From contig NIVC01000175.1 of assembly GCA_002269645.1 (NCBI GenBank), positions 773,029-837,028 on the forward strand: a stretch of DNA of 64,000 nt, in the 5' to 3' direction. Positions 6,401 through 48,804 of this stretch are shown here, one piece after another (position 1 is the stretch's first letter; each line of letters starts with the position of its first letter). A model generated the notes under the pieces. That model saw only the letters and a program-made list of their open reading frames with translations, had not been told where the DNA came from and did no database searches. The position numbers were made by a program, and so were the translations under genes. The DNA is from Macrostomum lignano (Eukaryota).

Positions 6401-9400
6401 TGTAAAATCAGCAGTAAATGTATACTGCTGAGCGTTATTTTCATCTGGGCTGCTCTACCTCTTACCCTTCACCCACTCTACCTCCCACCCTTCACCCACT
6501 CTACCTCCCACCCTTCACCCACTCTACCTCCCACCCTTCACCCACTCTACCTCCCACCCTTGATCCACTTTACCTCTCACCATTTATCTACTCTACCTCT
6601 CACCGTTCACCCACTCTACCTCTCACCGTTCACCCACTCTACCTCTCACTGTTCACCCACTCTACCTCTCACCGTTAACCCACTCTACCTCTCACTGTTC
6701 ACCCACTCTACCTCCCACCCTTCACCCACTCTACCTCTCACTGTTAACCCACTCTACCTCCCACCCTTCACCCACTCTACCTCCCACCCTTCACCCACTC
6801 TACCTCTCACCCTTGATCCACTCTAACTCTCACCCTTCACCCACTCCACCTCTCACCGTTCACTCCCTCTACTTCTCACCATTTATCCACTGTACCTCTC
6901 ACCATTTATCTACTCTACCGCTCACCGTTCACCCACTCTATTTCTCACCCTACCTATCACCCACCAGGAGCCGGTAGCGGCCGCTCTACTCTCCTCAATG
7001 ATCCTCAAAGCCATGGTTGGCCGCACAGACGATTTCACTGACAAAGAGGATTTCCAACGCGGCGGTGCTCAGTTCGAGGATCACGCCTGGGGAGTGCTGG
7101 ACCAGTGCTACCGGGAGGACGAGCGCAGGGCTCTGCTGCTCATTAACAGGGAGCTGAAGTTCTACGGTGACAGCTCCTGTATCTACCTGGCTGCCGAAGG
7201 TGAGAGCATCAAGTTCATGGCGCACCCGTGCTGTCAAGACTTCCTGACCAGCACTTGGATGGGCCGGCTGAGCGCCAAGAACTCCATGACAAGATTTTCT
7301 ATTGGGATTCTGTGCGGCATCGTGTGCCCCTGGCTTGTGCCCAGCGTCATGTTGTACAAGCTGACCGACAGGGAGATCGAGAGGCAGGTGGCGGAGCAGC
7401 AGCAGCAGAAGACTCCGTCTTTGACTGCTAGAAGCGAGGATGCAGCTGCGGATCCGGAATCTGGCGGGCCGACCTACGAAGGTGGAGACAGGTGAAACTG
7501 GCCTGTGGTTTCACGGACGCTTTTGTTTGTTTGAATGGGTTCCATTTACTCTGTTGTATCCCTTCAACCACTCTACTCTCACACAGCAGCCACTCTGCTC
7601 TCTCCCTTCACCCGCTCTACTCTCTCCCTTCACCCACTCTACTCTCTCCCTTCACCTGCTCTACTTTCTCTCTTCACCAGCTCTACCTCTCACGGTTCAC
7701 CCGCTCAACCTCTCACCCTTCACCCGCTCAACCCTCACCCTTCACCCGCTCTACTCTCTCCCATCACCTGCTCTACTCTCTCTCTTTACGAGCTCTACCT
7801 CTCATGACTCCACAGAGTTGAAATATCCAATACATTTATGGTTCAATCTATTTGATTTGGCGTGTCAGACAGTCTGAGATTCTGTCAGGGATCAGGGTGT
7901 AATGATATTCCTGCATTTGCATCATGTCTATTCTTCTCCCTAATGTCTATATACCTTGAGGAAGCAGATCTGCATAATGCGGGCATATGATAATTACAGC
8001 GTATTAGGCTAAAGAGGAAATTAGTACCATTGTAATTTGTACCGTCCTTTTCCTTTCTTTAGCCTAATTAGTAACTTTGTAAGTCAATCTCACTGAAGCA
8101 GCCAAAGAGTGGCTTTTGTACATCCTTGCAAAACGGAACCAACCCTTTCGACCGCTATTACCTTCTAATTCTTTGAATTGTAAAAGTACACAATTTGATT
8201 CTTTCCTGGGAAGTTGGTCAAGATATTCTTCTAGCGGAAAGCTATTGATATCTGAGAAATATAAGTGACGCAAATGGGAATATCTATTAGATTTTAACTA
8301 AAATATAGATTTGAAACAATGCTGTGAATTTAGAGAATAGAGGGAGATAGGAAATGTAGGGATATGGGGATATGGAGGTGGGAGATGTAGAGAGAAAGGA
8401 GATGTAGGGAGATGGGTAGAGAGATAAGGAGATGGGTAGAGATGTAGGGAGATGGGCAGAGATGTAGGGAGATGGGTAGGGATGTAGGGAGATGGGTAGA
8501 GATGTAGGGAGATGGGCAGAGATGTAGGGAGATGGGTAGAGATGTAGGGAGATGGCAGATGTAGTGAGATGGGAGATGTAGGGAGACAGGAGAGGTAGGG
8601 AGATGGGAGATGTAAGGAGATGGGAAGAGATAGGAAGATTGGAGTTGTAGGGAGATGTGAGATGTAGGGAGATGGGAAATGTAGGGAGATGGGAGATGTA
8701 AGGAGATGGGAAGAGATAAGAAGATTGGAGATGTAGGGAGATGGGAGATGTAAGGAGATGGGAAGAGATAAGAAGATTGGAGATGTAGGGAGATGGGAGA
8801 TGTAAGGAGATGGATTGGTATATTTAAAGACAGACCCTCTGCATTAGCAAGATCAGTATTGTCAGCTCTTCATCTCTCTTACCTTCTTTTATTAGAACAT
8901 ATTCTGCATGGTAACATCTATAGAATTTGGAATTCGATGACTGAGATAGCTTTGTTCAATGTCAAACTTTAAGACCACAAACTTTCAGGAAATCTTTGCT
9001 CAGCCACATCCGGCAGGCCAGCGTGCTCAACTGCGGTCAGACCTGCCAAAGAATGAAAGAGTTCTACATGGCTCCCGTGGTTCGATTCGTGTATAACACG
9101 GTGAGCTTTACCGCCGAGTTCATGCGTCTAGGGAGCCTAATTTGATGTGTCTGTAGTGCCTAATTTGATGTGTCTGTAGTGCCTAATTTGATGTGTCTGT
9201 AGCGCCTAATTTGATGTGTCTGTAGCGCCTAATTTGATGTGTCTGTAGTGCCTAATTTGATGTGTCTGTAGTTCCTAATTTGATGTGTCTGTAGTGTCTA
9301 ATTTGATGTGTCTGTAGTGCCTAATTTGATGTGTCTGTAGTGCCTAATTTGATGTGTCTGTAGTTCCTAATTTGATGTGTCTGTAGTGCCTAATTTGATG

Positions 9401-12400: not shown

Positions 12401-15400
12401 GCCACCCCAATGTACACTCTCTCCTAACCAGTCCCTCTCTAGCCCTCGCCACCCTCATCTGCATTAACCATCGCAACTCCAACCCAACCTCTGTGCAGGC
12501 CACCCTATCCGGAATCAGTTTCTCAACGTACATCTCAGACAGTTGGAACAAACTCGATTGTACAGCTGTGGGCTTATTCGTACTTGGCCTCGTACTGAGA
12601 CTAATATCTTTATTAAGTGAATCGCCCGAAACTGTACTCTTGTCCGGTCACGCCTATGACGTCATCCTCACGGACGGATTGTTTGTCGCGGCGAGAATTT
12701 GCTACGCCTTCAGTCTGTTCGCCTTCTGCATCCGACTGATGTACATCTTCAGTTTCCACATTGCCCTGGGACCGAAACTGATCATGATTGGCAAGATGGT
12801 TATTAACGATTTAGTGCCGTTCATGGTGATCTTGCTGGTGTTCATCCTCGGGTACGGGGTGGCGGCCCAGTCTATCGCTTATCCAACTGGATTTTACACG
12901 CCTAATCAGGATTTTAATAAGACATCGCCTAAGAAGATGACTCACACGGAGATTTTTATACACTTTTTAACTAGAGCCTATTTTCAAATGTTTGGCGACT
13001 TTGGATTGGACTCAATTCAGGCTGAGGGTGAGTGCGCCTGCTGGCTACTTGAGTGAGTGGAGAAGAGATTAGACAGGGTGAGATTAGAGAGAAAGATGGT
13101 GAGAATAGAGTAGGTGAGATTAGAGTAATAGAGAGGAGGAGACAGGAGTAGATGAGATTAGAGTAGGTGAGATTATAGCAGGTGAGATTAGAGTAGGTGA
13201 GATTGGAGAGCGAGATGGTGAGATTATAGTAGGTGAGATTATAGCAGGCGAGATTAGAGTAGGTGATATTAGAGAGCGAGAGGGTACAAGGGTGTGATTC
13301 GACAATAATGTAGAGAAAGTGGATGATAATACGTGAGATTTGAGAGCGAGAGGGTGAGATTAGAGTAAGTGAGATTAGAGAGTGTGATAAGTACGCTGGT
13401 ATTTGAGATGAGAGTGAGGCAGCAATCTTAATATCGGTTAAAAATCATAATGAATTCAATTAAATAAAGCAAAAGCATTTTGCTATTATTATTGATTTGC
13501 AGACAGCGGCTGCCTTGATGAGGGCAAGTGTCCCCACTGGACAGCAAAATGGCTACTGCCGATCATGCTCGGTGTCTACGTTCTCTTGACCAACATCCTC
13601 ATGTTTAACCTGTTGATCGCCATGTTCTCCAGCACCTACGAATCGATCAATCAGTTCTCTGCTCTGCACTGGAATTACCAACGGTACAGCATGATCAAGG
13701 AGTACATTGAAAGGTCACCGCTAGCTCCACCGCTGATCATTTTCTGGCATGCTTACGAGCTTGTGTTCTTTATCCAGTTGCGATATCAGGGTCGCAAACT
13801 ATCGGAACTGGAGGACCCGCTGAGAATCAGTTATAAAGACAATGTTAAAAAGGAGCGCGAACTCGTCAAGTGGGAGCACATGAAGGCGATGGACTTTTTG
13901 AGACAGGATCAGGAGTGTCATGGAAAGAAGGTGGGTTTTGATTGGCTGGGCGATGGTGAGTGCTTGGGCAGAGAATCGGAGGATGGGGTGGTGGGTGCTT
14001 GGGCAGAGAATCGGAGGATGGGGTTGTGGGTGTTGGGGCAGAGAATCGGAGGATGGGGTGGTGGGTGCTGGGGCAGGGAATCAGAGGATGGGGTGGTGGG
14101 TACTGGGGCAGAGAATCGGAGGATGGGGTGGTGGGTGCTGGGGCAGGGAATCGGAGGATGGGGTGGTGGGTGCTGGGGCGAGAATCGGAGGGTGGGGTGG
14201 TGGGTGCTAGGGCGAGAATCGGAGGGTTGGGTGGTGGGTGCTGGGGCAGGGAATCGGAGGATGGGGTGGTGGGTTCTGGGGCAGAGAATCAGAGCCTAGT
14301 GGTCTAGCGCGGCGCTCTGATGTGCCAGCGGCCCAGGCTCGATTTCAAGTGCAGTCCCATTAATTTGGTGCTAATTTGGAATCTCGGCTTGGCTCTGCTC
14401 GTGCAATTAAAGTCCTTGAGGGCCAACCCCCAAGGCACAGTGAAGTGTGCATGTCTAACGATAAAATAAAGTCAGGGCCGCTGTACACTCCTGTGTGAGT
14501 GTGTGCCTGTGCGTATGACTGCGTACGTATCCGCGCGCTGGTGTACCTGCTCAGGGGAGCCGGCGGAATGGGCAGAAAATGCCTCTCGCCGGTTGTGTGA
14601 CAATGTCGCTTAAAGTGCGCCAGGGTGCACACAGCCTCTAACTAAACGGGGTGGCGGTTGCTCGGTCGAGAAATCGGTGAATGGGGTGGCAGGTGTTAAA
14701 CCATCTCTACATCTCAGTAAAAAATAACAAAACACAGGGCGGTCGCTCGGACTCAAAGTCTGTCATAGTCAGGACTTCTGGTCCCCAGCTGGGTGCCGGC
14801 GGCCTTCTCCCGGCAGCGGCTGACGTGGCCAAGCAGATGTCGGACGCGACTAGCGGCATCGGGATGGAACTCGAAAAGAAATTCAAAAGCGTAGACACTC
14901 AGCTGACAAAGATTAGCACTGATTTCGATCAGAGATTGACCGACCTGTCAAACACGCTGAATGGATTCAGTGTTGCTGTGCAGGCGCTTCGGGAAGGCCA
15001 GGAGCGGCTGGCCTCGGTGCAGCAGGCGCGAGCAGTGGCCGGGTCGGTAAACACAGCCGAGGCGCAGCAGCAGCAGCTGAACCAACTCGAGCAGCGAGTT
15101 CTGGAAGCCGTCACCACAGCTTATCAGTCAGCCCCGCCAGCCTGGTTCCAGGAAATCGCCAGAACAGCCGCTGCGGAAGCTCTGGCCTCCACTCCGGTGT
15201 CAGTGGGGCAGCTGGACCAGGAGGTGCTGCAGCAGTTGGCTTCGGCCAGCTCCAGCAGCGGCACAGCGGAGAGGCGCTGGCGTCGACGGGGCGCCGCTCC
15301 GGCCAGTTCGGCAGGTGCAGATCCGACCTCCGGCAGCGCTGCTGTTGAAGGCGGCGGATTGCAGGGCTCCAGCCTGACTTCTGCTGCTTCAAAAGCGGCT

Positions 15401-18400
15401 GGTGCGACAACGGCGGGTGTCGCTGAGCCCAGAGGAGCCGCGGCGGCGACAGCAGCAACGGGAGCCACCGCCGCGGAGGAAGGAGACGACGAGGAGGACG
15501 ATTTTGACGACAACGAAGATCTGGAAGAGGACGCGGCCACCATAAGGCCGGTGGTGGACGATCCGGGAACCGGGCGTCTGATTGAATACCGGAGCCTGCA
15601 GCACCGCCTGTGGCGCTACGTGCCGTTCAACTTTGAGCAGTACCCGGGCATGCGGATGAATGTGCCGCCGGACAAGATCCCGTGGGAGGTGAGACTGGGG
15701 AGCCTGGCAGGTTTGGCTGTTTCACCGGCTACATTTACCTGTTTTACCGGTTAGATTTACCTGTTTCACTGGTTAGATTTACCTGTTTCACTGGTTAGAT
15801 TTACCTGTTTCACATAGTTAGATTCACCTGCTTCACTGGTTAGATTTACCTGCTTCACTGGTTAGATTTACCTGTTTCACTGGTTAGATTTACCTGTTTC
15901 ACTGGTTAGATTTACCTGTTTCACTGGTTAGATTCACCTGTTTCACTGGTTAGATTTACCTGTTTCACTGGTTAGATTCACCTGTTTCACTGGTTAGATT
16001 TACCTGCTTCACTGGTTAGATTTACCTGCTTCACTGGTTAGATTTACCTGCTTCACTGGTCAGATTCACCTGTTTCACTGGTTAGATTCACCTGTTTCAC
16101 TGGTTAGATTTACCTGTTTCACTGGTTAGATTCACCTGTTTCACTGGTTAGATTCACCTGCTTCACTGGTTAGATTTACCTGCTTCACTGGTTAGATTTA
16201 CCTGCTTCACTGGTTAGATTCACCTGTTTCACTGGTTAGATTTACCTGTTTCACTGGTTAGATTTACCTGCTTCACTGGTTAGATTTACCTGCTTCACTG
16301 GTTAGATTTACCTGCTTCACTGGTCAGATTCACCTGCTTCACTGGTTAGATTCACCTGTTTCACTGGTTAGATTTACCTGTTTCACTGGTTAGATTCACC
16401 TGTTTCACTGGTTAGATTCACCTGCTTCACTGGTTAGATTTACCTGCTTCACTGGTTAGATTTACCTGCTTCACTGGTTAGATTCACCTGTTTCACTGGT
16501 TAGATTTACCTGTTTCACTGGTTAGATTCACCTGCTTCACTGGTTAGATTTACCTGCTTCACTGGTTAGATTTACCTGTTTCACTGGTTAGATTCACCTG
16601 TTTCACTGGTTAGATTTACCTGCTTCACTGGTTAGATTTACCTGTTTCACTGGTTAGATTTACCTGTTTCACTGGTTAGATTCACCTGTTTCACTGGTTA
16701 GATTTACCTGCTTCACTGGTTAGATTTACCTGCTTCACTGGTTAGATTTACCTGTTTCACTGGTTAGATTCACCTGTTTCACTGGTTAGATTTACCTGTT
16801 TCACTGGTTAGATTTACCTGTTTCACTGGTTAGATTCACCTGTTTCACTGGTTAGATTCACCTGCTTCACTGGTTAGATTTACCTGCTTCACTGGTTAGA
16901 TTCACCTGTTTCACTGGTTAGATTCACCTGTTTCACTGGTTAGATTTACCTGTTTCACTGGTTAGATTCACCTTTTTCACTGGTTAGATTTACCTGCTTC
17001 ACTGGTTAGATTTACCTGTTTCACTGGTTAGATTCACCTGTTTCACTGGTTAGATTCACCTGTTTCACTGGTTAGATTTACCTGTTTCACTGGTTAGATT
17101 CACCTGTTTCACTGGTTAGATTTACCTGCTTCACTGGTTAGATTTACCTGTTTCACTGGTTAGATTCACCTGTTTCACTGGTTAGATTTACCTGTTTCAC
17201 TGGTTAGATTCACCTGTTTCACTGGTTAGATTCACCTGTTTCACTGGTTAGATTTACCTGTTTCACTGGTTAGATTTACCTGTTTCACTGGTTAGATTCA
17301 CCTGTTTCACTGGATAGATTTACCTGTTTCACTGGTTAGATTTACCTGCTTCACTGGTTAGATTTACCTGCTTCACTGGTTAGATTTACCTGCTTCACTG
17401 GTCAGATTCACCTGTTTCACTGGTTAGATTCACCTGTTTCACTGGTTAGATTTACCTGTTTCACTGGTTAGATTCACCTGTTTCACTGGTTAGATTCACC
17501 TGCTTCACTGGTTAGATTTACCTGTTTCACTGGTTAGATTCACCTGTTTCACTGGTTAGATTTACCTGCTTCACTGGTTAGATTCACCTGCTTCACTGGT
17601 TAGATTTACCTGCTTCACTGCTTAGATTTACCTGTTTCGTCCGTCAGATATTCTCGTTTCACCTGTCACATATAATATTTACCCTATTTTTTCTTTTCAA
17701 ATTAGTAGTATATAACAGTATCAAGCCTCATAAATATTAAATTTCAGATTGACTACCGTGATTACTTTGCATTCGATGCGTCTGAAGAGGTGCTTATCTT
17801 TCCTAACGAGGAGAGCTTCGATGGGCCAACAGTGTAAGCATACGAATTAGCATACAATGCCTCATTCTTTTGTAATTATTTAGCTACTAATTAGTCCTTT
17901 TTATTAACAGTTTCGAAAAACTTAATGATACCCGTCACGTGCTTTCATTTTGAGATACATTTAGAAATGTATTTTAATGACTAGATGAACTTTTTTAGGA
18001 AATTTTAAAAGATATTGCAACGAACCCGAACCATAACCCGTTCTCTATCATCACTTTACAATTATACGATAAGCGGAGATAACAGATAACAAATTCAAGT
18101 GCTTTCAATTTTACAAATGCAATTAGTGTAGAGAATTTTAGGCTGTTGTTATAAAGATTTCACAATATTCTCTATAGAGGCTCTTTAATCGATCCATGAA
18201 AAATATAAAAGCCACTCATAAAAATCGCTTCTATACAATATAGAAAATTATAAGAATCCCCTAAAGAATCGCCCACAGACAGCTGAAAAAATCGCCCATA
18301 GACAGTTTCTCCGATCCCATCTTCTCTCCCACCCTCCCAACCTCTCTCCCACCCCTACTCTCCCTCTCTAACACCCTCCCACCCTCTCTCCCACCCTTAC

Positions 18401-21400
18401 TCTCCCTCTCCCACCCCTACTCACTCTCTCCCATCCCAGAGAGCTTACTAAATCGCCCATAGACATTTTGGAAAATCGCCCATAGACAGTTTGGAATATC
18501 GCCCTTAGACAGCTTACAAAATCGCTCATAGACAGTTTGGAAAATCGCCCATAGACAGTTTGGAAAGTCGACTATAGGCAGCTTACAAAATCGCCCATAG
18601 ACAGTTTGAAAAATCGCCCATAGACAGCTTACAAAATCGCCCATAGACAGCTTGGAAAATCGCCCTAACGATGACTTGCAGGCCGCTGCAATCCATCAAC
18701 TTTAACCAGCTGGACAGTCGATCAGGACTCCGTCGGCAGAGCATGATGGGCAGATACCGCTTGGACACGGTGTCCTCTGCCCCCTTGAACCCCATGGGTC
18801 GAACTGGACTGAAGGGCAAGGGCCTGCTGCCTCGCTGGGGACCCAACAATGCCGTGGTGATCGCCATGACTCGATGGAGCCGCGCCCCTTCAGGCGCAGT
18901 CATTCATCGATTGGGTCATCCGATTCTGCAAGTGTTGTCGCTGTTTCGACACAAGCAGTTCTGCCTGCCATGGGTGAGCGGTTTCAAGCTTTCTCGATTA
19001 AACTGAGGGAACTATTTGGAAGCATTACAAAAGCTGGTTGTTAATATGGATACAACTTTGAAAAATCTCATAATTACCCAAAAGAGAAACTAAAATACCC
19101 AAAAATACATAATGACCCTAAAACTACACAATGAGCAGAAGACTACGCAATGACCCCAAAACTATACAATGACCCGAAGACTACGCAATGAACCCAAAAC
19201 TATACAATGACCCTAAAACTATACAATGATCCCAAAACTACACAATGACCCTAAAACTATACAATGACCCCAAAACTATACAATGACCCAAAGACTACGC
19301 AATGAACCCAAAACTACACAATGACCCCAAAACTATACAATGACCCCAAAACTACACAATGACCCAAAAACTACACAATGACCCCAAAACTACACAATGA
19401 CCCCAAAACTACACAATGACCCAAAGACTACGCAATGAACCCAAAACTATACAATGATCCCAAAACTACACAATGACCCCATAACTACACAATGACCCCA
19501 TAACTACACAATGACCCCAAAACTACACAATGAACCAAAAACTGCACCATAATGACCCCAAAACTACAGTGACTCCAATACTGCAAAATCACCCTAAAAC
19601 TACACAATGACCTCAGAACTGATCCCAAAACAATTTATTGACCAAACCCAAACTACACAATGACCCAAAACTATTTAATGCCAACCCAAAACTGCACAAT
19701 GACCCAACTTGTTTTAGTTTCTGACCGATCACTTCGATAACTGCGACTATGACGACTGCGTCCCGGCCCTGCTCAAGAACTTCATCAGCCGGCGACTCAA
19801 ACAGCTGCTGCAGAAGAAAGATGCTAGACAAGAGATCAACGCCATTATGAAGGGGCGGGCTGAACAGGTAGGCGGTGGGGTGAGAGTAGAGTGCGACGAG
19901 CCCGAGACTAGAGATAGCGGTCGTGAGAATAGACAGGATGATTACAGACTCTGATCTCTTGTGAGATAGGAGCCAGAATAGATGTAGAGATCAGAGTGAT
20001 ATTAGATTTAGAGATCGAGTGAGATTTAGATATAGTCGATCAGAGTGAGATTAGATATAGAGATCGAGTGAGATTTAGATATAGTCGATCAGAGTGAGAT
20101 TAGATATAGAGATCAGAGTGAGATTTAGATATAGTCGATCAGAGTGAGATTAGATATAGAGATCGAGTGAGATTTAGATATAGTCGATAAGAGTGAGATT
20201 AGATGTAGAGATCAGAGTGAGATTTAGATATAGTCGATCAGAGTGAGATTAGATATAGTAGATCAGAGTGATATTAGATATAGTAGATCAGAGTGAGATT
20301 AGATATAGTCGATCAGAGTGAGATTAGATATAGTCGATCAGAGTGAGATTAGATATAGTAGATCAGAGTGAGATGAGATATAGTAGATCAGAGTGAGATT
20401 AGATATAGTAGATCAGAGTGAGATTAGATATAGTAGATCAAAGTGAGATTAGATATAGTAGATCAGAGTGAGATTAGATATAGTAGATCAGAGTGAGATT
20501 AGATATAGTAGATCAAAGTGAGATTAGATATAGTAGATCAGAGTGAGATTAGATATAGTAGATCAGAGTGAGATTAGATATAGTAGATCAGAGTGAGATT
20601 AGATATAGTCGATCAGAGTGAGATTAGATATAGTCGATCAGAGTGAGATTATTACATGTACATGTATATATACAGATCAGAGTGAGATTATATAAGAGTA
20701 GATCAGAGTGAGCTTAGCTATAGAGATCTCATGATATATTTTTCCTCACTTCAGGCCCTTAGAAACTCGATGTCAGATGTGGTTAGTAAATGTTAAAGTG
20801 CACGCTATATGAACTAATTATAATGTCTACTTTTTAGTGGCCTGCTTTGCCTGCTCCAGACAAGCATGTTTTGGTTGAGTTCTTGCACAGTCCGATAAAA
20901 ACCAATCGGAGCTACAAAAGTAGGACTCAAAAAAACATTTTTCAGCCCCTAGTAGATCTACCATTTTGCATCTACCATCAGTCAGGATCAGATGGGCATG
21001 AGTGCTCAGCAATGAACAGAGCCATGTTGTGAAAAAACTGCCACGCCAGTTCAACAAAAGCTCAAGCGTTACTGAAGTTCAGATTTCGTATTCATATTTG
21101 TGACATTTATATGTTTGCTTTTGTTCTCTTCAATGTCGCTAAGCAAATATGCATGTTTTGCTGCTCTCATCCCCTTGTCAGGGGGTTGCAAGCAGAGCAG
21201 CTCAACCTCAACCATTAAACCCTCCCTCCAACCCTCCCACCCTCTCTCCCACCCCTCCCACCCCTCCCACCCCTCCCACCCTCTCTCCCACCCCTCCCAC
21301 CCTCTCTTCCACCCCTCCCACCCTCTCTCCCACCCCTCCCACCCTCTCTCCCACCGCTCCCACCCTCTCTCCCACCCTTACTCTCCCTCTCTCCCACCCC

Positions 21401-24400
21401 TACTCTCCATGTCTCCCACCCCCACTCTCCCTCTCTCCCACCCCTACTCTCCATGTCTCCCACCCCCACTCTCCCTCTCTCCCACCCCTACTCTCTATGT
21501 CTCCCACCCCCACTCTCCCACCCCTACTCTCCATGTCTCCCACCCCCACTCTCCCTCTCTCCCACCCCTACTCTCCATGTCTCCCACCCCCACTCTCCCA
21601 CCCCTCCCACCCTCTCTCCCACCCCTCCCACTACTCTCCCTCTCTCCTACCCCTACTCTCCCTCTTTCCCACCCCTACCCTCCCTCTCTCTCTCAACCCT
21701 ACTCCCTCTTTCTCTCTCTCTTTCTCTCCCACCCGTAAAAAATATAAATTATCGTAATTAACTCTCCGGTTTCCAATCCAGATTTTCAAAGGCTACATGG
21801 ACGACCATCTGAACGCGGACAACGCCTGGATTGAAGCCGTCGTGATCAACGTGCACGAGTCTGACAACTGGAAGTTCTCTGACGCCATGCTCAAGGTGAG
21901 GCAGATACAGATGAGCGAGACGGGGAGTGACACAAGGGGTGATGCAGGGGTGATACACGGACTGATTAACTAAGGAGTGACATATGAACTAGTGCCAGTG
22001 GCAGGGACACAGGGAGTGACACAGGGAGTGACACTAGAAGTGACACTAGGAGTGACACAGGGAGTGACACGGAGTGACACATGGAGTGACACTAGGAGTG
22101 AGACAGGGAGTGACACTAGGAGTGACACAGGGAGTGACACAGGGAGTGACACATGGAGTGACACGTGGAGTGACACTAGGAGTGACATTAGGAGTGACAC
22201 AAGGAGTGACACAGGGAGTGACACTACGAGTGACACAGGGAGTGACACTACGAGTGACACAGGGAGTGACACAGGGAGTGACACGGGGAGTGACACTAGG
22301 AGTGAGACAGGGAGTGACACTAGGAGTGACACAGGGAGTGACACAGGGAGTGACACATGGAGTGACACGTGGAGTGACACTAGGAGTGACACAGGGAGTG
22401 ACACAGGGAGTGACACTAGAAGTGACACTAGGAGTGACATTAGGAGTGACACTACGAGTGACACAGGGAGTGACACTAGGAGTGACACAGGGAGTGACAC
22501 AGGGAGTGACACTAGGAGTGACACTAGGAGTGACATTAGGAGTGACACAAGGAGTGACACAGGGAGTGACACTACGAGTGACACAGGGAGTGACACTACG
22601 AGTGACACAGGGAGTGACACAGGGAGTGACACGGGGAGTGACACAGGGAGTGACACAGGGAGTGACACTAGGAGTGACACAGGGAGTGACACAGGAAGTG
22701 GTTGCAGTTGCACTATACAAAGTAAGCCATACAAGCGCGGTCAGGTTGTCTGTTTGATTTTTAATACTCGATTAAAAAAGCCTTGCAAATGTCCTAATTA
22801 GTGATTGACTAAAGACTTTCCTAATTAGTTTTTAGCTTTACTTTCTTCATAAGCCTTTTCATTTGCAAAATTTATTTATTACGCTGCAGATCTTTAGCGT
22901 TTTTGGGAAATAATTAACTTTTTTAATCTCTTTGAGTCCGCAACTCTTTTTTGAATTTGCATTTGTCAAAAATTGAACTTTCAAAGTGGAACTATCAGCT
23001 CATTAGGCGGTTTGAATAAGAAGGTGAAAAAATCTCGGCAAAAAACTACAGCCTTGAAAGTTCAATGCCCCCGAAAAGTTTTCTCGTCTCTGGCAAGACT
23101 TTCTCGCGCGAATTTTCAAATGGGAAATAATGCTGTCTATGGGCCAACCATCCCGGCCGTGAAATGAGTGCTTTTTTCTCTCTGTTGATTGGTACCCGAA
23201 TTGCAGGAATAGTCCTTTTTGCGGCCTAGTTGGTACTGCAAGCGTTCAATTTAATCATAGATACGGAAATCTGACTTGCGAGACTGAAAATTTTCTGTCC
23301 ATGGTCGACACTCGCTGGCATAGCGGAGTTCAATTTAATCTTGGGGGCATCAATTTGATCATTCTATGCATACAATGCACATTTTTACTGTCATGGTAAC
23401 TTGTTTTTAGCTTGTCTTTTACATCATATGATCCTTGGAGAGACTATGATGGCATCCAGGTTCCAGAAGTTCAGGTGCAAAGTGTGAAGAGTCGTGATGT
23501 ACTTGATGGCGAGGAGTTCTGTGTGATCATGAATGGAGCCCGTTTTCATCATGGAGTGACAATCCCAGATCAATTTCAGCCCGCTTGGTGCCTGGTGACA
23601 TTGCCTCCTTACTCGCAGTTCCTCAATCCTGTGGAGAACGCGCACGCCTGTCTGAAGGCAGCCAAAAGCCAGCTGGCTCAACCACAACTGCAAGAAGAGC
23701 TGGACACTCCGCCTGATGGTCATTCGCTACGAGAGTGGAGAATCCTTGTCCTACAGAGGGTTGCAGAGGACGCAACCCGTGAAGTGACCGTTGCAAAACG
23801 CGGAGGCTGGTACCGGCAGATGCTGAGGTTTATTCCAGCCTGCATCGCTGGACAGCCAGTCAATCTAAACATTTTTTGACTCGACAACACAGGATATCTA
23901 ACGTTATTTGATTAGAATGATCAAATTGATGCCCCCAGGATTAAATTGAACTCCGCTATGCCAGCGAGTGTCGACCATGGACAGAAAATTTTCAGTCTCG
24001 CAAGTCAGATTTCCGTATCTATGATTAAATTGAACGCTTGCAGTACCAAGGCAGCAAAAAGGAATAATACCCATGGAATTCCTATCGCTTGAATTCTTGT
24101 AAAAATATACCAATATTGATGGGCTGCAGAGGGCAGAAACTAGCTATAGCGCCGAGGCGCGAAGCAACTACGCTAAGCATAGTTAGCCTAGGCGTGTTGA
24201 AACGGGCTGAAACGCACAGGTATCTAGTTAATGTTGCTACAACTTGTAAATTTTAAAAGTAAAGCTTAGTGCTGCTTAATACACCTTTTCACGTTTAATT
24301 TCGATCAAAGTCCAGTTCTTAAAAAACTAGTTGAAATTCAATTCAGACAATTCAGACTGGGACAATGCTTACGGAAAATCGATAAAAACAAACCCCAATT

Positions 24401-24515: not shown

Positions 24516-25596
24516 CCGGAGAGACCGGATATTGCTAGAGAGATAGAGAGATAGAGTGAGAGTGAGAGAGAGAGAGAGCGAATTCAGAGCAGACAACAGT
24601 CTAATCTACAGTGTAAAAAAAGCAGAGGGCCCAGCTGAAGCAGGAACAGAAGCATAGAGCCGGAATAGAAGTGCTCTGATGCACGCTAATCTCTTTAGCA
24701 ATATCCAACAGCAGGGAAGTGAAAATTTCTTAGGTATCAGAAGTGTAATCTCCATCTTCTTGTTTTGTGGGACAAAGCACTTCTTCTGTCTCTGTTTATT
24801 GCTGGAGAAAATGGTCCGTTAGAAAAGAGATTTTCGTCTCCACCCTCTCCTGTCTTCTCTTTACCCTCTCCTGCCTCCTCTCTACCGTCTCCTCTCTAAC
24901 CTCTTTTGTTTCCTCTCTACCCTCTCCTTTTTCCTCTCTACCCTCTCCTGTTTTCTCTCTACCCTCTCCTGTTTCCTCTCTACCCTCTCCTGTTTCCTCT
25001 CTACCCTCTCCTGTTTCCTCTCTACCCTCTCCTGTTTCCTCTCTACCCTCTCCTGTTTCCTCTCTACCCTCTCCTGTTTCCTCTCTACCCTCTCCTGTTT
25101 CCACTCTACCCTCTCCTGTTTCCTCTCTACCCTCTCCTGTTTCCACTCTACCCTCTCCTGTTTCCTCTCTACCCTCTCCTGTTTCCACTCTACCCTCTCC
25201 TGTTTCCTCTCTACCCTCTCCTGTTTCCTCTCTACCCTCTCGTGTTTCCACTCTACCCTCTCCTGTTTCCTCTCTACCCTCTCCTGTTTCCTCTCTACCC
25301 TCTCCTGTTTCCTCTCTACCCTCTCCTGTTTCCTCTCTACCCTCTCCTGTTTCCTCTCTACCCTCTCCTGTTTCCTCTCTACCCTCTCCTGTTTCCTCTC
25401 TACCCTCTCCTGTCGCCCCATTTCTCCTTTTCAAGTCTCAGACCCCCCGACCCCCTCCTCTACCGCTCAGGTGTTTAGCGAGGTGGACTCGGACGAGCAG
25501 GCACGCTGGATGGAGGTGGCATACAGCACGGCTATGCGCTCCAGCCATTGCGAGATGTTGAAAACCATCGCTTCAAATCACCGAGCATATTTTTAA
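280..25596 (+). CDS. TRPM2: TRPM2-like cation channel with C-terminal NUDT9-H domain (flatworm TRPM_PZQ-like); 17 exons in window, 5' part missing
   Basis: Joined exons total 4385 nt with all intron phases matching. They give MHR4 motifs ([17 protein letters not shown]; [13 protein letters not shown]), pre-S1 [10 protein letters not shown]1-S6, the TRP box WNYQRY, a coiled coil, and NUDT9 motifs [20 protein letters not shown] and [15 protein letters not shown]. Stop TAA at 25594-25596. The symbol reflects domain architecture; orthology was not tested. Confidence 0.93.
574..666 (+). CDS. TRPM exon (phase 1-1)
   Basis: tttttcaag|atc acceptor and gaag|gtatt donor; 93 nt ([30 protein letters not shown]). 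Confidence 0.6.
845..1215. repeat. Minisatellite, about 77-bp unit x5
   Basis: aacacagtagcgataaaatgggg recurs at 847, 924, 1001, about 1076 and about 1152. Confidence 0.9.
1485..1622 (+). CDS. TRPM exon (phase 1-1)
   Basis: ttccgcag|agg acceptor and aaga|gtaagt donor; 138 nt ([18 protein letters not shown]...KKVK). Confidence 0.65.
1775..2935. repeat. Minisatellite: 21-bp unit switching to a 19-bp unit
   Basis: gataaatggagtgacaagtag up to about 2560, then agagagtgacaagtagaag. Confidence 0.95.
3011..3178 (+). CDS. TRPM exon (phase 1-1)
   Basis: cacatcag|gag acceptor and gaag|gtgga donor; 168 nt ([26 protein letters not shown]...PAVE). Confidence 0.6.
3372..4405. repeat. Minisatellite, 33-bp unit
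   Basis: gggagatgcacaatcgtgaagggctgagacgta, about 30 copies, degenerate at the 3' end. Confidence 0.95.
4456..4704 (+). CDS. TRPM exon (phase 1-1; acceptor could instead be 4501 or 4522)
   Basis: taactaac branch-like motif then agcag|acg; gaag|gtgag donor; 249 nt (..[19 protein letters not shown]). Confidence 0.6.
4712..6055. repeat. Minisatellite, 21-bp unit in two variant blocks
   Basis: ctctctactgcctccattccg, then ctctctactgtcac(c/a)atccg. Confidence 0.95.
6223..6332 (+). CDS. TRPM exon, start of MHR4
   Basis: ctcgcag|aat ... gagaag|gtggg; encodes [36 protein letters not shown], matching the TRPM P..DLLIWA....A..FW motif. Confidence 0.9.
6455..6960. repeat. Minisatellite, 23-bp C-rich unit
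   Basis: cctcccacccttcacccactcta; a related array lies at 7560-7805. Confidence 0.9.
6968..7491 (+). CDS. TRPM exon, MHR4 and pre-S1
   Basis: caccag|gag ... acag|gtgaa; [16 protein letters not shown]...[20 protein letters not shown]...[16 protein letters not shown]. Confidence 0.92.
7560..7805. repeat. Minisatellite, about 23-bp C-rich unit
   Basis: ccttcacccgctctactctctc variants. Confidence 0.8.
8340..8815. repeat. Purine-rich minisatellite (gatgtagggagatgg core)
   Basis: 15-20-bp units. Confidence 0.85.
8989..9100 (+). CDS. TRPM exon, pre-S1 and start of S1
   Basis: actttcag|g ... aacacg|gtgag; KSLLSHIRQ...[16 protein letters not shown]. Confidence 0.92.
9135..10260. repeat. Two abutting 23-bp minisatellites
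   Basis: gcctaatttgatgtgtctgtagt (9135-9680), then gggatccctaatgtagtgtgtca with higher-order blocks (9685-10260). Confidence 0.95.
10457..10585 (+). CDS. TRPM exon, S1-S2
   Basis: atttcag|ttc ... aagcag|gtaag; [43 protein letters not shown]. Confidence 0.93.
10890..11165. repeat. GA-rich repeat, about 21-bp unit
   Basis: gagatgaggggagagaagggg. Confidence 0.85.
11930..12460. repeat. Minisatellite, about 46-47-bp unit
   Basis: ccccaatgtacactctctcccgaccagtccctctctatcccccgcca. Confidence 0.9.
12499..13027 (+). CDS. TRPM exon, S3-S5, pore helix and filter
   Basis: tgtgcag|gcc ... gagg|gtgag; [18 protein letters not shown]...[24 protein letters not shown]. Confidence 0.93.
13060..13400. repeat. 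Degenerate 15-bp repeat
   Basis: gtgagattagagtag variants. Confidence 0.75.
13503..13930 (+). CDS. TRPM exon, pore loop, S6 and TRP helix
   Basis: atttgcag|ac ... aagaag|gtggg; [44 protein letters not shown]. Confidence 0.93.
13950..14293. repeat. G-rich minisatellite, 35-bp unit
   Basis: gggcagagaatcggaggatggggtggtgggtgctg. Confidence 0.9.
14294..14645 (+). mobile_element. tRNA-derived SINE, copy 1 (TRPM intron)
   Basis: A-box-like gcctagtggtct and B-box-like ggctcgattt; body ggaatctcggcttggctctgctcgtgcaat...gcgtatgactgcg is shared with copies at 49341 and 50286. Confidence 0.75.
14738..15688 (+). CDS. TRPM exon, coiled coil, long linker and start of NUDT9-H
   Basis: aacacag|ggc ... gggag|gtgag; coiled coil ELEKKF...LASVQQ, Ala-rich and acidic linker, then HRLWRY...VPPDKIPWE. 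Confidence 0.88.
15715..17640. repeat. Minisatellite, 22-bp unit, about 87 copies
   Basis: gttagatt(t/c)acctg(t/c)ttcactg, starting about 25 bp after the donor at 15689. Confidence 0.97.
17748..17833 (+). CDS. TRPM exon, NUDT9-H N-terminal subdomain
   Basis: atttcag|att ... acagt|gtaagc; [28 protein letters not shown]; its phase-2 end matches the next exon. Confidence 0.8.
18285..18665. repeat. About 23-bp repeat interrupted by a C-rich tract
   Basis: aaatcgcccatagacagtttgga. Confidence 0.8.
18682..18973 (+). CDS. TRPM exon, NUDT9-H
   Basis: cttgcag|g ... tgg|gtgag; [32 protein letters not shown], matching the NUDT9 signature. Confidence 0.93.
19085..19710. repeat. Minisatellite, 19-bp unit
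   Basis: atgaccccaaaactacaca. Confidence 0.9.
19718..19867 (+). CDS. TRPM exon, degenerate Nudix-box region
   Basis: gttttag|ttt ... gaacag|gtagg; 150 nt, [31 protein letters not shown]...AEQ. Confidence 0.8.
19985..20725. repeat. Minisatellite, 25-bp unit
   Basis: agatcagagtgagattagatatagt. Confidence 0.93.
21225..21735. repeat. C-rich low-complexity minisatellite
   Basis: ccctcccaccctctctccca and ctcccacccctactctccatgt units. Confidence 0.85.
21782..21895 (+). CDS. TRPM exon, NUDT9-H
   Basis: aatccag|att ... caag|gtgag; [28 protein letters not shown], similar to NUDT9 YKGYVDDPRNTDNAW. Confidence 0.93.
21975..22697. repeat. Minisatellite, 12-bp unit
   Basis: gagtgacacagg and gagtgacactag. 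Confidence 0.95.
23236..24043 (+). mobile_element. Internally deleted IS630/Tc1-mariner-type DNA transposon
   Basis: 131-bp TIRs (23236-23366, 23913-24043, one mismatch) with TA on both sides; internal transposase remnant IMNGARFH...[19 protein letters not shown]. Confidence 0.9.
24140..24227 (+). mobile_element. Possible Helitron-type 3' end fragment
   Basis: GC-rich gcgccgaggcgc, an imperfect hairpin and a terminal CTAG followed by T; no 5' end or Rep/helicase seen. Confidence 0.25.
24445..24580. repeat. Compound (TA)n(GA)n microsatellite
   Basis: Read directly from the sequence. Confidence 0.9.
24840..25412. repeat. Minisatellite, 21-bp pyrimidine-rich unit
   Basis: tcctctctaccctctcctgtt. 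Confidence 0.95.
25471..25596 (+). CDS. TRPM terminal exon
   Basis: cgctcag|gtg; [41 protein letters not shown], similar to the NUDT9 C-terminus (W..I...L.ASH...). Confidence 0.88.
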   Translation: MFSEVDSDEQARWMEVAYSTAMRSSHCEMLKTIASNHRAYF

Positions 25597-29915: not shown

Positions 29916-29965
29916 ATCAAACTTACCGATTGAATAAATCATTTGCCAAGGATTCGTGCTAAATC

Positions 29966-48606: not shown

Positions 48607-48804
48607 CTGGAATTTTAACAATATTTTCGATACATATCGGTTTTATGGTAAAGGTTAGTTTAAAAGACTTAGCTTGTGAGACAATATATGTATGTACTAG
48701 CTAAACTCCTACATAATTTTGCTAGTTGTAAAAGTAGTTCAATAATAGTAGTATAGCATATAAAATATATTCGAAACAACGTTATAATTGGCGGCAAAAT
48801 TAAG

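What the first reader, a model, noticed from the sequence alone, without database searches (positions are those of the whole stretch)
18950..19815. NUDT9-H domain with an obliterated Nudix box: an invertebrate pseudo-enzyme
Seen: where NUDT9 has [12 protein letters not shown].....LKREFGEE, this protein has [31 protein letters not shown]. The GG, the Glu and the REF-EE are all absent, while the flanking NUDT9 motifs are well conserved. The P-to-K spacing (20 vs 14 residues) means no missing exon is needed. Known: characterised invertebrate and choanoflagellate TRPM2s are active ADP-ribose hydrolases, and loss of activity was described for vertebrates. Inference: independent loss of ADPRase activity, uncoupled from pore change, with a new Cys/Asp-rich loop that might bind metal.
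Basis: partly seen in the sequence, partly recalled or inferred. Interest (0 to 1): 0.7.

Follow-up and report, generated by a model that had tools for sequence, protein, structure and literature searches.

The report
Flatworm praziquantel-channel NUDT9-H domain without Nudix box
The C-terminal "enzyme" domain of this Macrostomum lignano channel, from the family that includes the praziquantel drug target, keeps the NUDT9 fold. Every residue needed to cut ADP-ribose has been swapped for a His/Cys motif conserved across flatworms, so it is almost certainly not an enzyme.

Summary
Exons 18682-18973 and 19718-19867 splice GT-AG, in phase, to give FCLPW|[27 protein letters not shown] where NUDT9 has [27 protein letters not shown]. 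The 304-aa domain is a clear NUDT9 homologue by sequence (E=3e-31) and by predicted fold (TM 0.71). It has no Nudix box, and no hidden exon in the window supplies one.

The window is Macrostomum lignano, gene BOX15_Mlig004938. Its channel belongs to the TRPM_PZQ clade: its pocket residues match the published 'NIE' barcode of Ml.TRPM_PZQ.

The loss is not peculiar to this gene. All 12 full-length sequences sampled from three flatworm NUDT9-H channel groups lack the box and share P-W-x4-H-x3-C-x4-C. Those five residues are among only 24 columns (W48 to H289) invariant across those groups. Two further, divergent M. lignano genes keep only His and two Cys.

ADP-ribose contact residues are also gone: R1433→Leu and Y1485→Arg in the domain, and 2 of 3 in the N-terminal site.

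Best reading: an ancient, selected pseudo-enzyme module, a third independent loss after vertebrate TRPM2 and TRPS. I found no paper in the searchable library that reports it. Metal or redox binding by the His/Cys loop is untested. Interest is moderate.

The parts
18682..18973 (+). NUDT9-H exon. It runs from the cap/core motifs [22 protein letters not shown] to ...HKQFCLPW. The last codons are F171 C172 L173 P174 W175 (18959-18973), followed by the donor GTGAGC.
   Evidence: Searches give the sequence and splice sites. One search gives the alignment to NUDT9. Searches show identical annotated models.
18974..19717 (+). Phase-0 GT-AG intron. Most of it is a 19-bp minisatellite (19098-19620, 27.5 copies). 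It holds no coding potential for a Nudix box.
   Evidence: The intron position after 'PW' looks conserved, by inference: several truncated gene models in other flatworms stop right after xPW or continue PWV.., as if reading into an intron.
19718..19867 (+). Exon encoding [50 protein letters not shown]. This is the replaced Nudix loop and helix.
   Evidence: The AF2 model keeps a helix at residues 186-205.
19730..19759 (+). Codons H180 (19730-32), C184 (19742-44) and C189 (19757-59). They form the H-x3-C-x4-C core of a 6-residue insertion, invariant in flatworm groups A, B and C. It is a candidate metal or redox site.
   Evidence: 24 invariant columns (W48 to H289), including P174, W175, H180, C184 and C189. 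One search gives the motif table.
19778..19798 (+). Codons N196 F197 I198 S199 R200 R201 L202. They occupy the place of the catalytic box R-E-F-x-E-E-A. The two Mg-binding Glu residues are replaced by Arg.
14735..15688 (+). Exon with a long linker rich in Ala, Gly, Gln, Asp and Glu, and the N-terminal start of NUDT9-H (from about 15542: [16 protein letters not shown]...PPDKIPWE).
   Evidence: tblastn of PAA88821.1 confirms it.
17748..17833 (+). NUDT9-H exon [28 protein letters not shown](V). Its end is phase 2.
20755..20781 (+). Optional 27-nt cassette exon (ALRNSMSDV) with AG/GT sites. It is present in NCBI model PAA88821.1 and absent from UniProt model A0A1I8GTE3 and from the orthologues. 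It lies after the box and does not restore it.
21782..21895 (+). NUDT9-H exon [38 protein letters not shown]. The family motif DDPRNTDNAW is [10 protein letters not shown] here, so the hTRPM2 R1433 equivalent is L235.
25471..25596 (+). Last exon [16 protein letters not shown]...[20 protein letters not shown], with stop codon TAA at 25594-25596. The hTRPM2 Y1485 equivalent is R286.
12496..13044 (+). Channel exon (approximate ends) covering S3 to S5, the pore helix and the filter [12 protein letters not shown]. It includes the S4-S5 'I' of the NIE barcode (MYIFSF).
13502..13936 (+). Channel exon (approximate ends) covering S6 and the TRP helix [14 protein letters not shown]. It includes the TRP-helix 'E' of the NIE barcode.
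6938..7492 (+). Exon (approximate ends) covering the MHR4/pre-S1 'TRPM2-like domain'. tblastn also places further upstream exons at about 282-665, 1484-1630, 4524-4715, 6222-6332, 8987-9109 and 10457-10642. The window starts at about residue 564 of the 1954-aa protein.
   Evidence: (PF25508, E=7.5e-20).

Best explanation
**What it is.** The region encodes the C-terminal NUDT9-homology domain of a Macrostomum lignano TRPM channel, gene BOX15_Mlig004938. The gene belongs to the TRPM_PZQ clade. It is either Ml.TRPM_PZQ itself or a close paralogue.

**What happened (shown).** The domain keeps the NUDT9 fold but is a pseudo-enzyme.
- The Mg-binding, catalytic Nudix loop-helix (GG...E...REFxEE) is replaced by P-W-x4-H-x3-C-x4-C...NFISRR, with a 6-residue insertion.
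- The ADP-ribose-contacting residues are also replaced.
- All 12 full-length sequences from flatworm groups A, B and C share the replacement. Two divergent M. lignano genes (group D) also lack the box and keep His and two Cys.

**Inferred history.** The replacement happened once, in the stem of the flatworm NUDT9-H TRPM clade. It predates the split into the three paralogue groups and the Macrostomum/Neodermata split. It has been under purifying selection since.

**Inferred mechanism.**
- The domain neither hydrolyses ADP-ribose nor binds it in the canonical way.
- The channel is probably no longer ADP-ribose-gated, because the N-terminal site is also degraded.
- The domain persists as a folded cytosolic regulatory or scaffolding module.
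- The new His/Cys loop stabilises the old active-site region or senses something else.
For: **Homology and fold.**
- NUDT9 E=3.3e-31.
- AF2 pLDDT 77, pTM 0.77, with the helix at 186-205 kept.
- Foldseek top hit NUDT9 1qvj, E=2e-19, TM 0.71.

**Box absent.**
- Searches show the substitutions.
- Pfam NUDIX does not hit the window domain even at E<=10, whereas a canonical NUDT9 hits at 29.8 bits.
- There is no alternative exon.

**Active-site remodelling.** 48 of 97 family-invariant columns are changed, concentrated at the active site:
- HAADP→NAVVI
- WAIPGGMV→FCLPWFLT
- REFxEEA→NFIxRRL
- PRNT→HLNA
- AGDDA→EVDSD

**ADP-ribose contacts.** The hTRPM2 contacts D1431, R1433 and Y1485 (PMC6759353) and Y1349 (PMC5473349) correspond to D, L, R and V here.

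**Organism and gene.**

**TRPM_PZQ clade.**
- Published Sm residues N1388, T1518, W1667 and D1677 map with a single offset onto S. rodhaini P0014.
- P0014 groups with the window gene at bootstrap 100 in the channel tree and 90 in the domain tree.
- The window has N/I/E at the barcode sites, as published for Ml.TRPM_PZQ (PMC9910428).

**Clade-wide motif and selection.**
-.
- Window identity to schistosome and cestode domains: 46-56% over MAFFT-aligned columns, 41-53% by BLASTP/phmmer.

**N-terminal ADP-ribose site.** hTRPM2 Y295, R302 and R358 correspond to K, R and G.

**Literature.** Deleting NUDT9-H does not change the praziquantel response of Sm.TRPM_PZQ (bioRxiv 10.1101/2021.03.09.434291).
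Against: - No enzymatic or binding assay exists. A 2024 review says the domain's enzymatic capacity and binding properties are unknown (PMC11731825).
- Nudix-fold enzymes can place the catalytic base outside the box (discussed in PMC6461439). The loop is acidic (D179, D182, D185, D187, D188), so non-canonical metal-dependent chemistry is not excluded.
- Residue mapping rests on alignments in a region with a 6-residue indel. phmmer and MAFFT place the gap differently.
- pLDDT in the loop is only about 72.
- Single origin is inferred from NJ trees of limited sampling.
- The published Ml.TRPM_PZQ numbering (E1495) matches none of the gene models at hand. Which paralogue was cloned is therefore unknown.
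Confidence: 0.8

Rival explanations
1. Annotation or splicing artefact. The true mRNA uses another exon or splice site that restores a canonical Nudix box.
For: - No RNA data could be examined.
- One alternative gene model does add a 27-nt exon nearby, at 20755-20781. This shows the models are not fully settled.
Against: - There is no + strand Nudix-box peptide in the gene. The single REUxEE match (24889-24906) is minus-strand translated minisatellite.
- Most of the intron is minisatellite.
- The splice sites are consensus and in phase.
- Two independent annotations use the same junction.
- Cestode, trematode and monogenean homologues encode the same contiguous [LF]PW[FYL][LF]x[DRQK]H..C....C peptide across the junction.
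Confidence: 0.02
2. The domain is still a hydrolase, of ADP-ribose or another nucleotide. It uses a non-canonical metal site built from the new His/Cys/Asp loop.
For: - The fold is intact.
- H180, C184 and C189 are invariant. A His-Cys-Cys triad plus water is a known catalytic-zinc arrangement (my own background knowledge, not tested here).
- The loop is acidic in the window protein.
Against: - The phosphate- and adenine-contacting residues are also lost (R→L235, Y→R286, Y→V137).
- The Asp residues of the loop are not conserved between groups.
- I know of no precedent for a Nudix fold working without the REUxEE helix glutamates. NUDT9 with RILGEE or REFGKK is inactive (PMC6461439).
Confidence: 0.07
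3. The domain is a neutral relic. It is decaying after loss of function and is kept only because it is fused to an essential channel.
For: - Branches of the flatworm NUDT9-H domains are long.
- Deletion does not alter praziquantel activation of Sm.TRPM_PZQ (bioRxiv 10.1101/2021.03.09.434291).
Against: - The open frame is intact over six exons.
- Identity is about 41-56% between Macrostomum and parasitic flatworms.
- The replaced loop itself holds 5 of the 24 clade-invariant columns.
- The domain is kept in at least five M. lignano genes and in three schistosome paralogue groups.
Confidence: 0.06
4. The channel is really a member of TRPS, the sister family of TRPM. In that case the missing catalytic residues would be the already described ancestral TRPS loss.
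For: - TRPS NUDT9-H domains lack the catalytic residues (PMC13143021).
- Neither large TRPM/TRPS phylogeny sampled Platyhelminthes (PMC7306681, PMC13143021).
- In my tree the node joining flatworms to TRPM2-like channels has weak support, 43%.
Against: - The channel domain is 36% identical to Lingula TRPM2 and 31% to vertebrate TRPM2. C. elegans TRPS (ced-11) is only about 18% identical to that worm's canonical TRPMs (PMC7306681).
- The best solved-structure hit is nvTRPM2, E=8.5e-73.
- The N-terminal MHR1/2 matches hTRPM2 best, then TRPM8 and TRPM4.
- Pfam TRPM2-like domain scores 178 bits.
Confidence: 0.05

Closest known systems
Sm.TRPM_PZQ / Ml.TRPM_PZQ (flatworm praziquantel-activated TRPM channels)
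   Same: - Same clade: bootstrap 100 with the S. rodhaini orthologue, whose N1388/T1518/W1667/D1677 equivalents map exactly.
- Same architecture: SLOG/MHR, TRPM2-like domain, channel, linker and NUDT9-H.
- The window has the 'NIE' pocket barcode published for Ml.TRPM_PZQ (PMC9910428).
- Schistosome orthologues carry the same replaced box, LCMPWYLTDHT[SN]KCDFDEC.
   Different: - Published work calls the domain an 'enzymatic domain' or says its capacity is unknown (PMC6901322, PMC11731825). Here the catalytic and ligand residues are shown to be missing.
- I could not settle whether this locus or its paralogue Mlig001812 is the cloned Ml.TRPM_PZQ.
Vertebrate TRPM2 NUDT9-H (inactive, ADP-ribose-binding)
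   Same: A channel-fused NUDT9 homologue that has lost hydrolase activity through Nudix-box change (PMC6461439). The fold is the same.
   Different: - In hTRPM2 only REFGEE→RILRQE changed. PGG, the Gx5E Glu, R1433 and Y1485 remain, and ADP-ribose still binds.
- Here the whole loop-helix is replaced, six residues are inserted, GG becomes WF and EE becomes RR. The R1433 and Y1485 equivalents are Leu and Arg.
- The loss is phylogenetically independent.
- The pore keeps invertebrate-like features.
nvTRPM2 / srTRPM2 chanzymes and standalone NUDT9
   Same: Homologous domain and, for nvTRPM2, the most similar solved channel. Both have cap and core regions.
   Different: Those proteins have canonical boxes (AEFGEE, REFMEE, REFGEE) and are active ADP-ribose hydrolases (PMC6461439). 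The window protein has NFISRR.
TRPS (CED-11-like) NUDT9-H
   Same: An invertebrate channel-fused NUDT9-H reported to lack the catalytic residues (PMC13143021).
   Different: The window channel looks like TRPM-beta/TRPM2-like, not TRPS. No TRPS sequence was available for a direct comparison of the replacement motif.
Non-catalytic Nudix-fold ligand sensors (NrtR, AraR)
   Same: A Nudix fold reused without catalysis as a regulatory module. Both appear among the weaker fold matches.
   Different: They are bacterial transcription factors with very low identity (10-12%). This is an analogy only.

Membership tests
Nudix hydrolase superfamily (active enzymes) | Nudix box Gx5Ex7REUxEExGU, with Mg-binding glutamates on the helix | tested here: not met
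   G175, G176, R196, E197, F198, E200 and E201 are W, F, N, F, I, R and R. The regex scan of the window found no box on the + strand of the gene.
Nudix hydrolase superfamily (active enzymes) | Match to the Pfam NUDIX profile PF00293 | tested here: not met
   No hit at E<=10 for the window domain, for the S. intercalatum orthologue or for the full-length protein. The canonical NUDT9 P0183 scores 29.8 bits against a cut-off of 21.1.
NUDT9 / NUDT9-H domain family | Sequence homology across the cap and core regions | tested here: met
   E=3.3e-31 to human NUDT9 over residues 33-303. 49 of 97 family-invariant columns are kept, including PLNPxGRTG, WGPN, KGYxDD and DNAWxE.
NUDT9 / NUDT9-H domain family | NUDT9 three-dimensional fold | tested here: met
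   AF2 model pLDDT 77.3. Foldseek top hit 1qvj, E=2e-19, TMq 0.71.
NUDT9 / NUDT9-H domain family | ADP-ribose contact residues (hTRPM2 D1431, R1433, Y1485, Y1349) | tested here: not met
   They correspond to D233, L235, R286 and V137, so only the Asp is kept. Residue roles are taken from PMC6759353 and PMC5473349.
TRPM channels, TRPM2-like (beta) group | SLOG/MHR N-terminus, TRPM2-like domain, six-TM channel and TRP helix WxxQR, with closest relatives annotated TRPM2 | tested here: met
   PF18139 at 147.7 bits, PF25508 at 178 bits and Ion_trans. nvTRPM2 E=8.5e-73. 36% identity to Lingula TRPM2. MHR1/2 matches hTRPM2 best.
TRPM channels, TRPM2-like (beta) group | ADP-ribose gating site in MHR1/2 (hTRPM2 Y295, R302, R358) | tested here: not met
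   PAA88821.1 has K, R and G at these positions. This part of the gene lies upstream of the window.
TRPM_PZQ orthogroup | Groups with schistosome TRPM_PZQ, and has pocket barcode residues at the S1, S4-S5 and TRP-helix positions | tested here: met
   Bootstrap 100 with S. rodhaini P0014. P0014 carries N, T, W and D exactly at Sm positions 1388, 1518, 1667 and 1677 with one offset. The window has N/I/E, as published for Ml.TRPM_PZQ (PMC9910428).
TRPM_PZQ orthogroup | Activation by praziquantel | not testable with these tools
   Published for an M. lignano orthologue, EC50 18 uM (PMC9910428). Whether that clone is this locus is unresolved.
TRPS (soromelastatin) | Clusters with CED-11-like channels and has only about 18% identity to canonical TRPMs | tested here: inconclusive
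   Identity to TRPM2-like channels is 31-36%, which argues against TRPS. No TRPS sequence could be obtained for a direct test.
Structural or sensory zinc site (hypothetical) | A conserved set of three or four Cys/His ligands | tested here: met
   H180, C184 and C189 are invariant in 15 sequences of three groups. C172 is conserved in groups A and B.
Structural or sensory zinc site (hypothetical) | Ligand geometry compatible with metal coordination, and bound metal | not testable with these tools
   Model coordinates are not exposed.

The most novel reading that the evidence does not exclude
The six-residue insertion with invariant His180, Cys184 and Cys189 (plus Cys172 in the TRPM_PZQ group and its sister group) turns the old Mg/ADP-ribose site into a zinc- or thiol-redox-sensing site. 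The NUDT9-H domain of the praziquantel-target channel family would then be a new kind of cytosolic sensor, one that couples metal or oxidative state to channel regulation. It would give a first lead to the unknown endogenous regulation of TRPM_PZQ.
Probability: 0.2. Interest if true: 0.75.

Novelty: new variant of a known kind. Interest (0 to 1): 0.5.

Why it matters
**1. A field generalisation needs amending.** One statement holds that Nudix boxes are canonical in all invertebrate TRPM2-type channels (PMC6461439). Another holds that catalytic residues were lost twice, in TRPS and in vertebrate TRPM2 (PMC13143021). Both studies left out flatworms. Flatworms show a third and far more radical loss. 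Some mollusc paralogues are also degenerate.

**2. It bears on a stated open question about a drug target.** The channel family is the target of praziquantel, the only drug in mass use against schistosomiasis. A 2024 review calls the enzymatic capacity and binding properties of its NUDT9-H domain unknown (PMC11731825). The sequence evidence predicts no ADP-ribose hydrolysis and probably no canonical ADP-ribose binding, at either site. That redirects the search for the endogenous activator.

**3. It offers a testable handle.** The replacement motif (P-W-x4-H-x3-C-x4-C) is among the most conserved features of the domain. M. lignano is a free-living laboratory model suitable for testing it.

Tried and rejected
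- **Word-index search with the S6-TRP exon.** It found a single fragment and was of no use for classification.
- **Group B as TRPM_PZQ.** I first took group B (S. spindale, 2328 aa) for TRPM_PZQ because of its length. I rejected this when the published residues N1388, T1518, W1667 and D1677 mapped exactly onto the group A S. rodhaini protein instead. Group B has E where trematode TRPM_PZQ has D, and cestode group B has N where cestode TRPM_PZQ has H.
- **Hidden-exon idea.** Rejected after the six-frame motif scan and TRF.
- **Biopython bootstrap.** It timed out and was redone with numpy distances.
- **Metal-site geometry.** Model coordinates are not provided, so Cys/His distances could not be measured.
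- **Supplements.** Those of Himmel 2020 and Rohr 2022 are not held. The Morini 2026 alignments are images. I therefore have no TRPS motif comparison and no accession for Ml.TRPM_PZQ.
- **Park & Marchant 2020 (PMC6937385).** Not held. It could contain a remark on the Nudix box that I cannot see.
- **Pfam PF25969.** This NUDT9-type model is listed in precomputed annotations but appears absent from the local library: even a canonical NUDT9 did not hit it at E<=10. Its absence means nothing.
- **dN/dS.** Not attempted. The only available comparisons are saturated, and no paralogue DNA was at hand.
Full report
**1. The observation**

- On the + strand an exon ends ...CAC AAG CAG TTC TGC CTG CCA TGG|gtgagc at 18973. 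The next exon begins ttgttttag|TTT CTG ACC GAT CAC TTC GAT AAC TGC GAC TAT GAC GAC TGC GTC CCG... at 19718 and ends CAG|gtaggc at 19867.
- I joined these to four neighbouring exons: part of 14735-15688, then 17748-17833, 21782-21895 and 25471-25596. All are GT-AG and in frame. The result is a 304-aa C-terminal domain ending in a stop codon.
- The domain matches human NUDT9 (1q33) at E=3.3e-31, the Nematostella TRPM2 chanzyme at 9.6e-30 and human TRPM2 at 2e-26.
- Where NUDT9 reads [30 protein letters not shown], the window reads [34 protein letters not shown].
- In a 90-sequence alignment of NUDT9-family proteins, 97 columns are at least 85% invariant. The window keeps 49 of them.
- The 48 changes cluster in the active site:
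  - HAADP→NAVVI
  - WAIPGGMV→FCLPWFLT
  - GE→DD
  - REFxEEA→NFIxRRL
  - PRNT→HLNA
  - AGDDA→EVDSD
- The fold-defining motifs remain: [14 protein letters not shown], KGYxDD and DNAWxE.
- The family alignment places a 6-residue insertion (H180-Y186) between the conserved Asp179 and the old Gx5E position. Pairwise phmmer shifts the gap, with the same outcome for the catalytic residues.
- One correction: the Gx5E glutamate position is Asp188 here and Glu in cestode and schistosome orthologues.

**2. It is not an artefact**

- A six-frame scan for REUxEE or Gx5Ex7RE finds nothing on the + strand within the gene. The one REUxEE match (24889-24906) is on the minus strand, in translated minisatellite.
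- Most of intron 18974-19717 is a 19-bp minisatellite, 27.5 copies at 19098-19620.
- The exhaustive representative search returned a 1229-aa protein that is 100% identical to my whole 304-aa model.
- Cluster look-up identifies that protein as Macrostomum lignano A0A1I8GTE3. It clusters with NCBI PAA88821.1 (BOX15_Mlig004938g2, 1954 aa).
- tblastn places residues ~564-1954 of PAA88821.1 in the window.
- The NCBI model adds a 27-nt exon (20755-20781, ALRNSMSDV, good AG/GT sites) after the box region. Orthologues lack it and it does not restore anything.
- Pfam NUDIX does not hit the window domain at E<=10. A canonical NUDT9 passes the cut-off.

**3. What the gene is**

- The full protein carries SLOG-in-TRPM, the TRPM2-like domain and Ion_trans.
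- The channel region hits nvTRPM2 best among solved structures, E=8.5e-73. All TRPM1-8 structures follow.
- The channel region is 36% identical to Lingula TRPM2 and 31% to vertebrate TRPM2.
- The N-terminal MHR1/2 matches human TRPM2 best (E=5e-39), then TRPM8 and TRPM4.
- These figures fit TRPM-beta/TRPM2-like membership rather than TRPS. C. elegans TRPS (ced-11) is only about 18% identical to that worm's canonical TRPMs (PMC7306681). No TRPS sequence was available for a direct test, and neither large TRPM/TRPS phylogeny sampled flatworms (PMC7306681; PMC13143021).
- A channel-domain NJ tree gives a monophyletic flatworm clade (bootstrap 100). Its subgroups are ((A,B),(C,D)).
- Group A holds the window gene, two M. 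lignano paralogues and a 1488-aa S. rodhaini protein (bootstrap 100).
- The S. rodhaini protein is an N-terminally truncated TRPM_PZQ orthologue. With a single offset of 766, the published Sm.TRPM_PZQ residues N1388, T1518, W1667 and D1677 fall on N, T, W and D. The implied length is 2254 aa against 2268 aa (residues from PMC9910428).
- At the three variable pocket positions the window protein has N (VYNTFSY), I (MYIFSF) and E (MIKEY). This is the 'NIE' barcode published for Ml.TRPM_PZQ, which was expressed and is activated by (R)-praziquantel at 18 uM (PMC9910428).
- Paralogue Mlig001812 is also NIE, and the published numbering (E1495) fits no model at hand. The window gene is therefore Ml.TRPM_PZQ or a near paralogue.
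- Groups B and C look like the two other schistosome 'nudix subclade' TRPMs mentioned in PMC11731825. Group B includes S. spindale (2328 aa) and Taenia. Group C includes the S. japonicum and S. mekongi proteins annotated 'TRPM2'.

**4. The loss is clade-wide and the replacement is selected**

- I took the 150 best NUDT9-H relatives from a library of 1.84 billion representatives and tabulated the box region.
- Most standalone NUDT9-sized proteins keep REUxEE. So do several TRPM2-like channels: S. rosetta, M. brevicollis and three unnamed long proteins. Lingula (RMEFAEE) and one TRPM-like-2 (KNEFGEE) keep the glutamates.
- All 12 full-length flatworm sequences of groups A, B and C read ...[LF]PW[FYL][LF]x[DRQK]H(x3)C(x4)C... 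instead.
  - Macrostomum (A): [18 protein letters not shown]
  - S. rodhaini TRPM_PZQ (A): CMPWYLTDHTSKCDFDEC
  - Hymenolepis (A): CLPWFFTDHESRCDYDEC
  - S. spindale (B): CLPWYLTDHREDCDFQDC
  - Taenia (B): CLPWFFVDHRESCDFRGC
  - S. japonicum (C): QLPWYLVQHPTHCNLKVC
  - Cichlidogyrus (C): QFPWFFLKHNRNCDGNTC
- The two group D genes (M. lignano Mlig003066, Mlig025325) also lack the box but are more divergent. Both keep His180 and two Cys; Mlig003066 reads FPS, not PW.
- Across 15 sequences of groups A to C only 24 columns, spanning W48 to H289 of the domain, are invariant. Five of them are P174, W175, H180, C184 and C189.
- Window identity to the S. rodhaini and Hymenolepis domains is 53% by phmmer/BLASTP. 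Over MAFFT-aligned columns the first hits give 46-56%.
- The domain tree is compatible with one origin of the altered domain and shows long flatworm branches.
- Several truncated gene models in other flatworms stop at, or read through after, '...xPW'. I infer that the intron position is conserved too.

**5. Ligand binding**

- In human TRPM2 the NUDT9-H ADP-ribose is held by D1431, R1433 and Y1485 (PMC6759353), and Y1349 matters as well (PMC5473349). The window equivalents are D233, L235, R286 and V137. Leu235 and Arg286 are shared by the flatworm orthologues.
- The orthosteric N-terminal site uses Y295, R302 and R358 (PMC6759353). In PAA88821.1 these are K, R and G. This lies outside the window and is alignment-based.
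- Canonical ADP-ribose binding is therefore unlikely at both sites.
- This fits the literature. The endogenous activator of TRPM_PZQ is unknown. NUDT9-H truncation does not change its praziquantel response (bioRxiv 10.1101/2021.03.09.434291; PMC10868838).

**6. Structure**

- AF2 with a 90-row alignment gives pLDDT 77.3 and pTM 0.77. The strands around C172 to T178 and a helix at 186-205 sit where the Nudix helix belongs.
- Foldseek's best hit is NUDT9 1qvj (E=2e-19, TMq 0.71). The choanoflagellate chanzyme and human TRPM2 follow.
- The fold is therefore retained.
Whether H180, C184, C189 and possibly C172 can coordinate a metal could not be checked.

**7. Pore**

- Aligned to nvTRPM2 (QMYGELFLDEIQGE), the window reads [14 protein letters not shown].
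- It has an acidic filter residue, no vertebrate-type Pro, and two of the three following acidic positions.
- The vertebrate pairing of 'box loss plus pore change' (PMC6461439) is therefore not repeated here.

**8. Comparison with what is known, and novelty**

- Channel-fused NUDT9-H pseudo-enzymes are known in vertebrate TRPM2 and have been reported for TRPS (PMC6461439, PMC13143021).
- The flatworm case is independent and much more drastic, and it carries a new conserved motif.
- The papers I could search describe the TRPM_PZQ domain as 'enzymatic' or of unknown capacity (PMC6901322, PMC11731825, PMC13020021). None reports the missing box. One relevant review (PMC6937385) could not be read.
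- I rate this a new variant of a known kind, of moderate interest.
- The speculative part is a Zn or redox sensor in the drug-target family. It would be more interesting if true, but it rests only on conservation of His and Cys.

**9. Verdict**

- The pseudo-enzyme reading is well supported at sequence and fold level (confidence about 0.8).
- It is an ancient, flatworm-wide feature of the praziquantel-target family, not a one-gene curiosity.
- The function of the new loop is unknown and is the point worth testing.

Noticed in passing
window 15717-17638, 18450-18665, 19098-19620, 19975-20651, 22006-22700, 24837-25414 (similar arrays upstream, about 1700-6100, 6400-7000, 8300-8850, 11800-12450): Almost every intron of this gene is filled with a different 12-25-bp minisatellite. 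One example is a 22-bp unit repeated 87 times with 94% matches. Their translations give long spurious ORFs on both strands.
   Followed up: partly
window 20755-20781: A 27-nt exon (ALRNSMSDV) with good splice sites. It is included in one annotated model (PAA88821.1) and skipped in another (A0A1I8GTE3), and it is absent from all orthologues. It may be an M. lignano-specific cassette exon in the loop after the Nudix-helix region.
   Followed up: partly
window 29963-31669 (+): A single-exon ORF of 569 aa encoding a rhodopsin-type GPCR (7tm_1 E=1e-18, Srw-like E=5e-17), just downstream of the channel gene. UniProt models A0A1I8IS91 and A0A1I8IJC9 (P0012, P0164) are named as G-protein-coupled receptors yet carry the NUDT9-H residues. 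They look like chimeric gene predictions fusing NUDT9-H exons to a GPCR, probably this one.
   Followed up: partly
protein PAA88821.1 (P0158) residues ~40-400, encoded upstream of the window: The N-terminal MHR1/2 ADP-ribose site of the same protein has lost two of the three key residues: hTRPM2 Y295→K and R358→G, with R302 kept. The channel seems to have left ADP-ribose control altogether.
   Followed up: partly
related proteins P0126 (Sinanodonta woodiana) and P0037 (Lymnaea stagnalis): Mollusc TRPM2-like channels with partly degenerate Nudix boxes (IKFSEE, IDFKES) while keeping PG or PGG. The statement that invertebrate boxes are always canonical also fails outside flatworms.
   Followed up: no
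window 43870-48642 (-): A multi-exon gene on the opposite strand with a RING finger (48454-48642) and WD40 repeats (43870-44469, 45570-46334). From memory it resembles TRAF7. Only the Pfam domains were tested.
   Followed up: partly
window 56557-58252 (+): A long ORF with a Ser/Thr protein kinase domain (Pkinase E=9e-64), followed by a second ORF with no Pfam hit. It may be a polo-like kinase, but this was not checked.
   Followed up: no
window 23400-23876 (+) and 54105-54497 (-): Two ORFs share a similar peptide: ...CLKA.K.QLA.P.LQ.EL..PPDG..L..WR.LVL... They look like remnants of one transposon family, one of them inside the last intron of the channel gene.
   Followed up: no
window 14363-14641 (-) and 49416-49706 (-): Two nearly identical about 95-aa ORF translations: ...[22 protein letters not shown]... 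This is a dispersed repeat present in an intron of the channel gene and again about 35 kb away.
   Followed up: no
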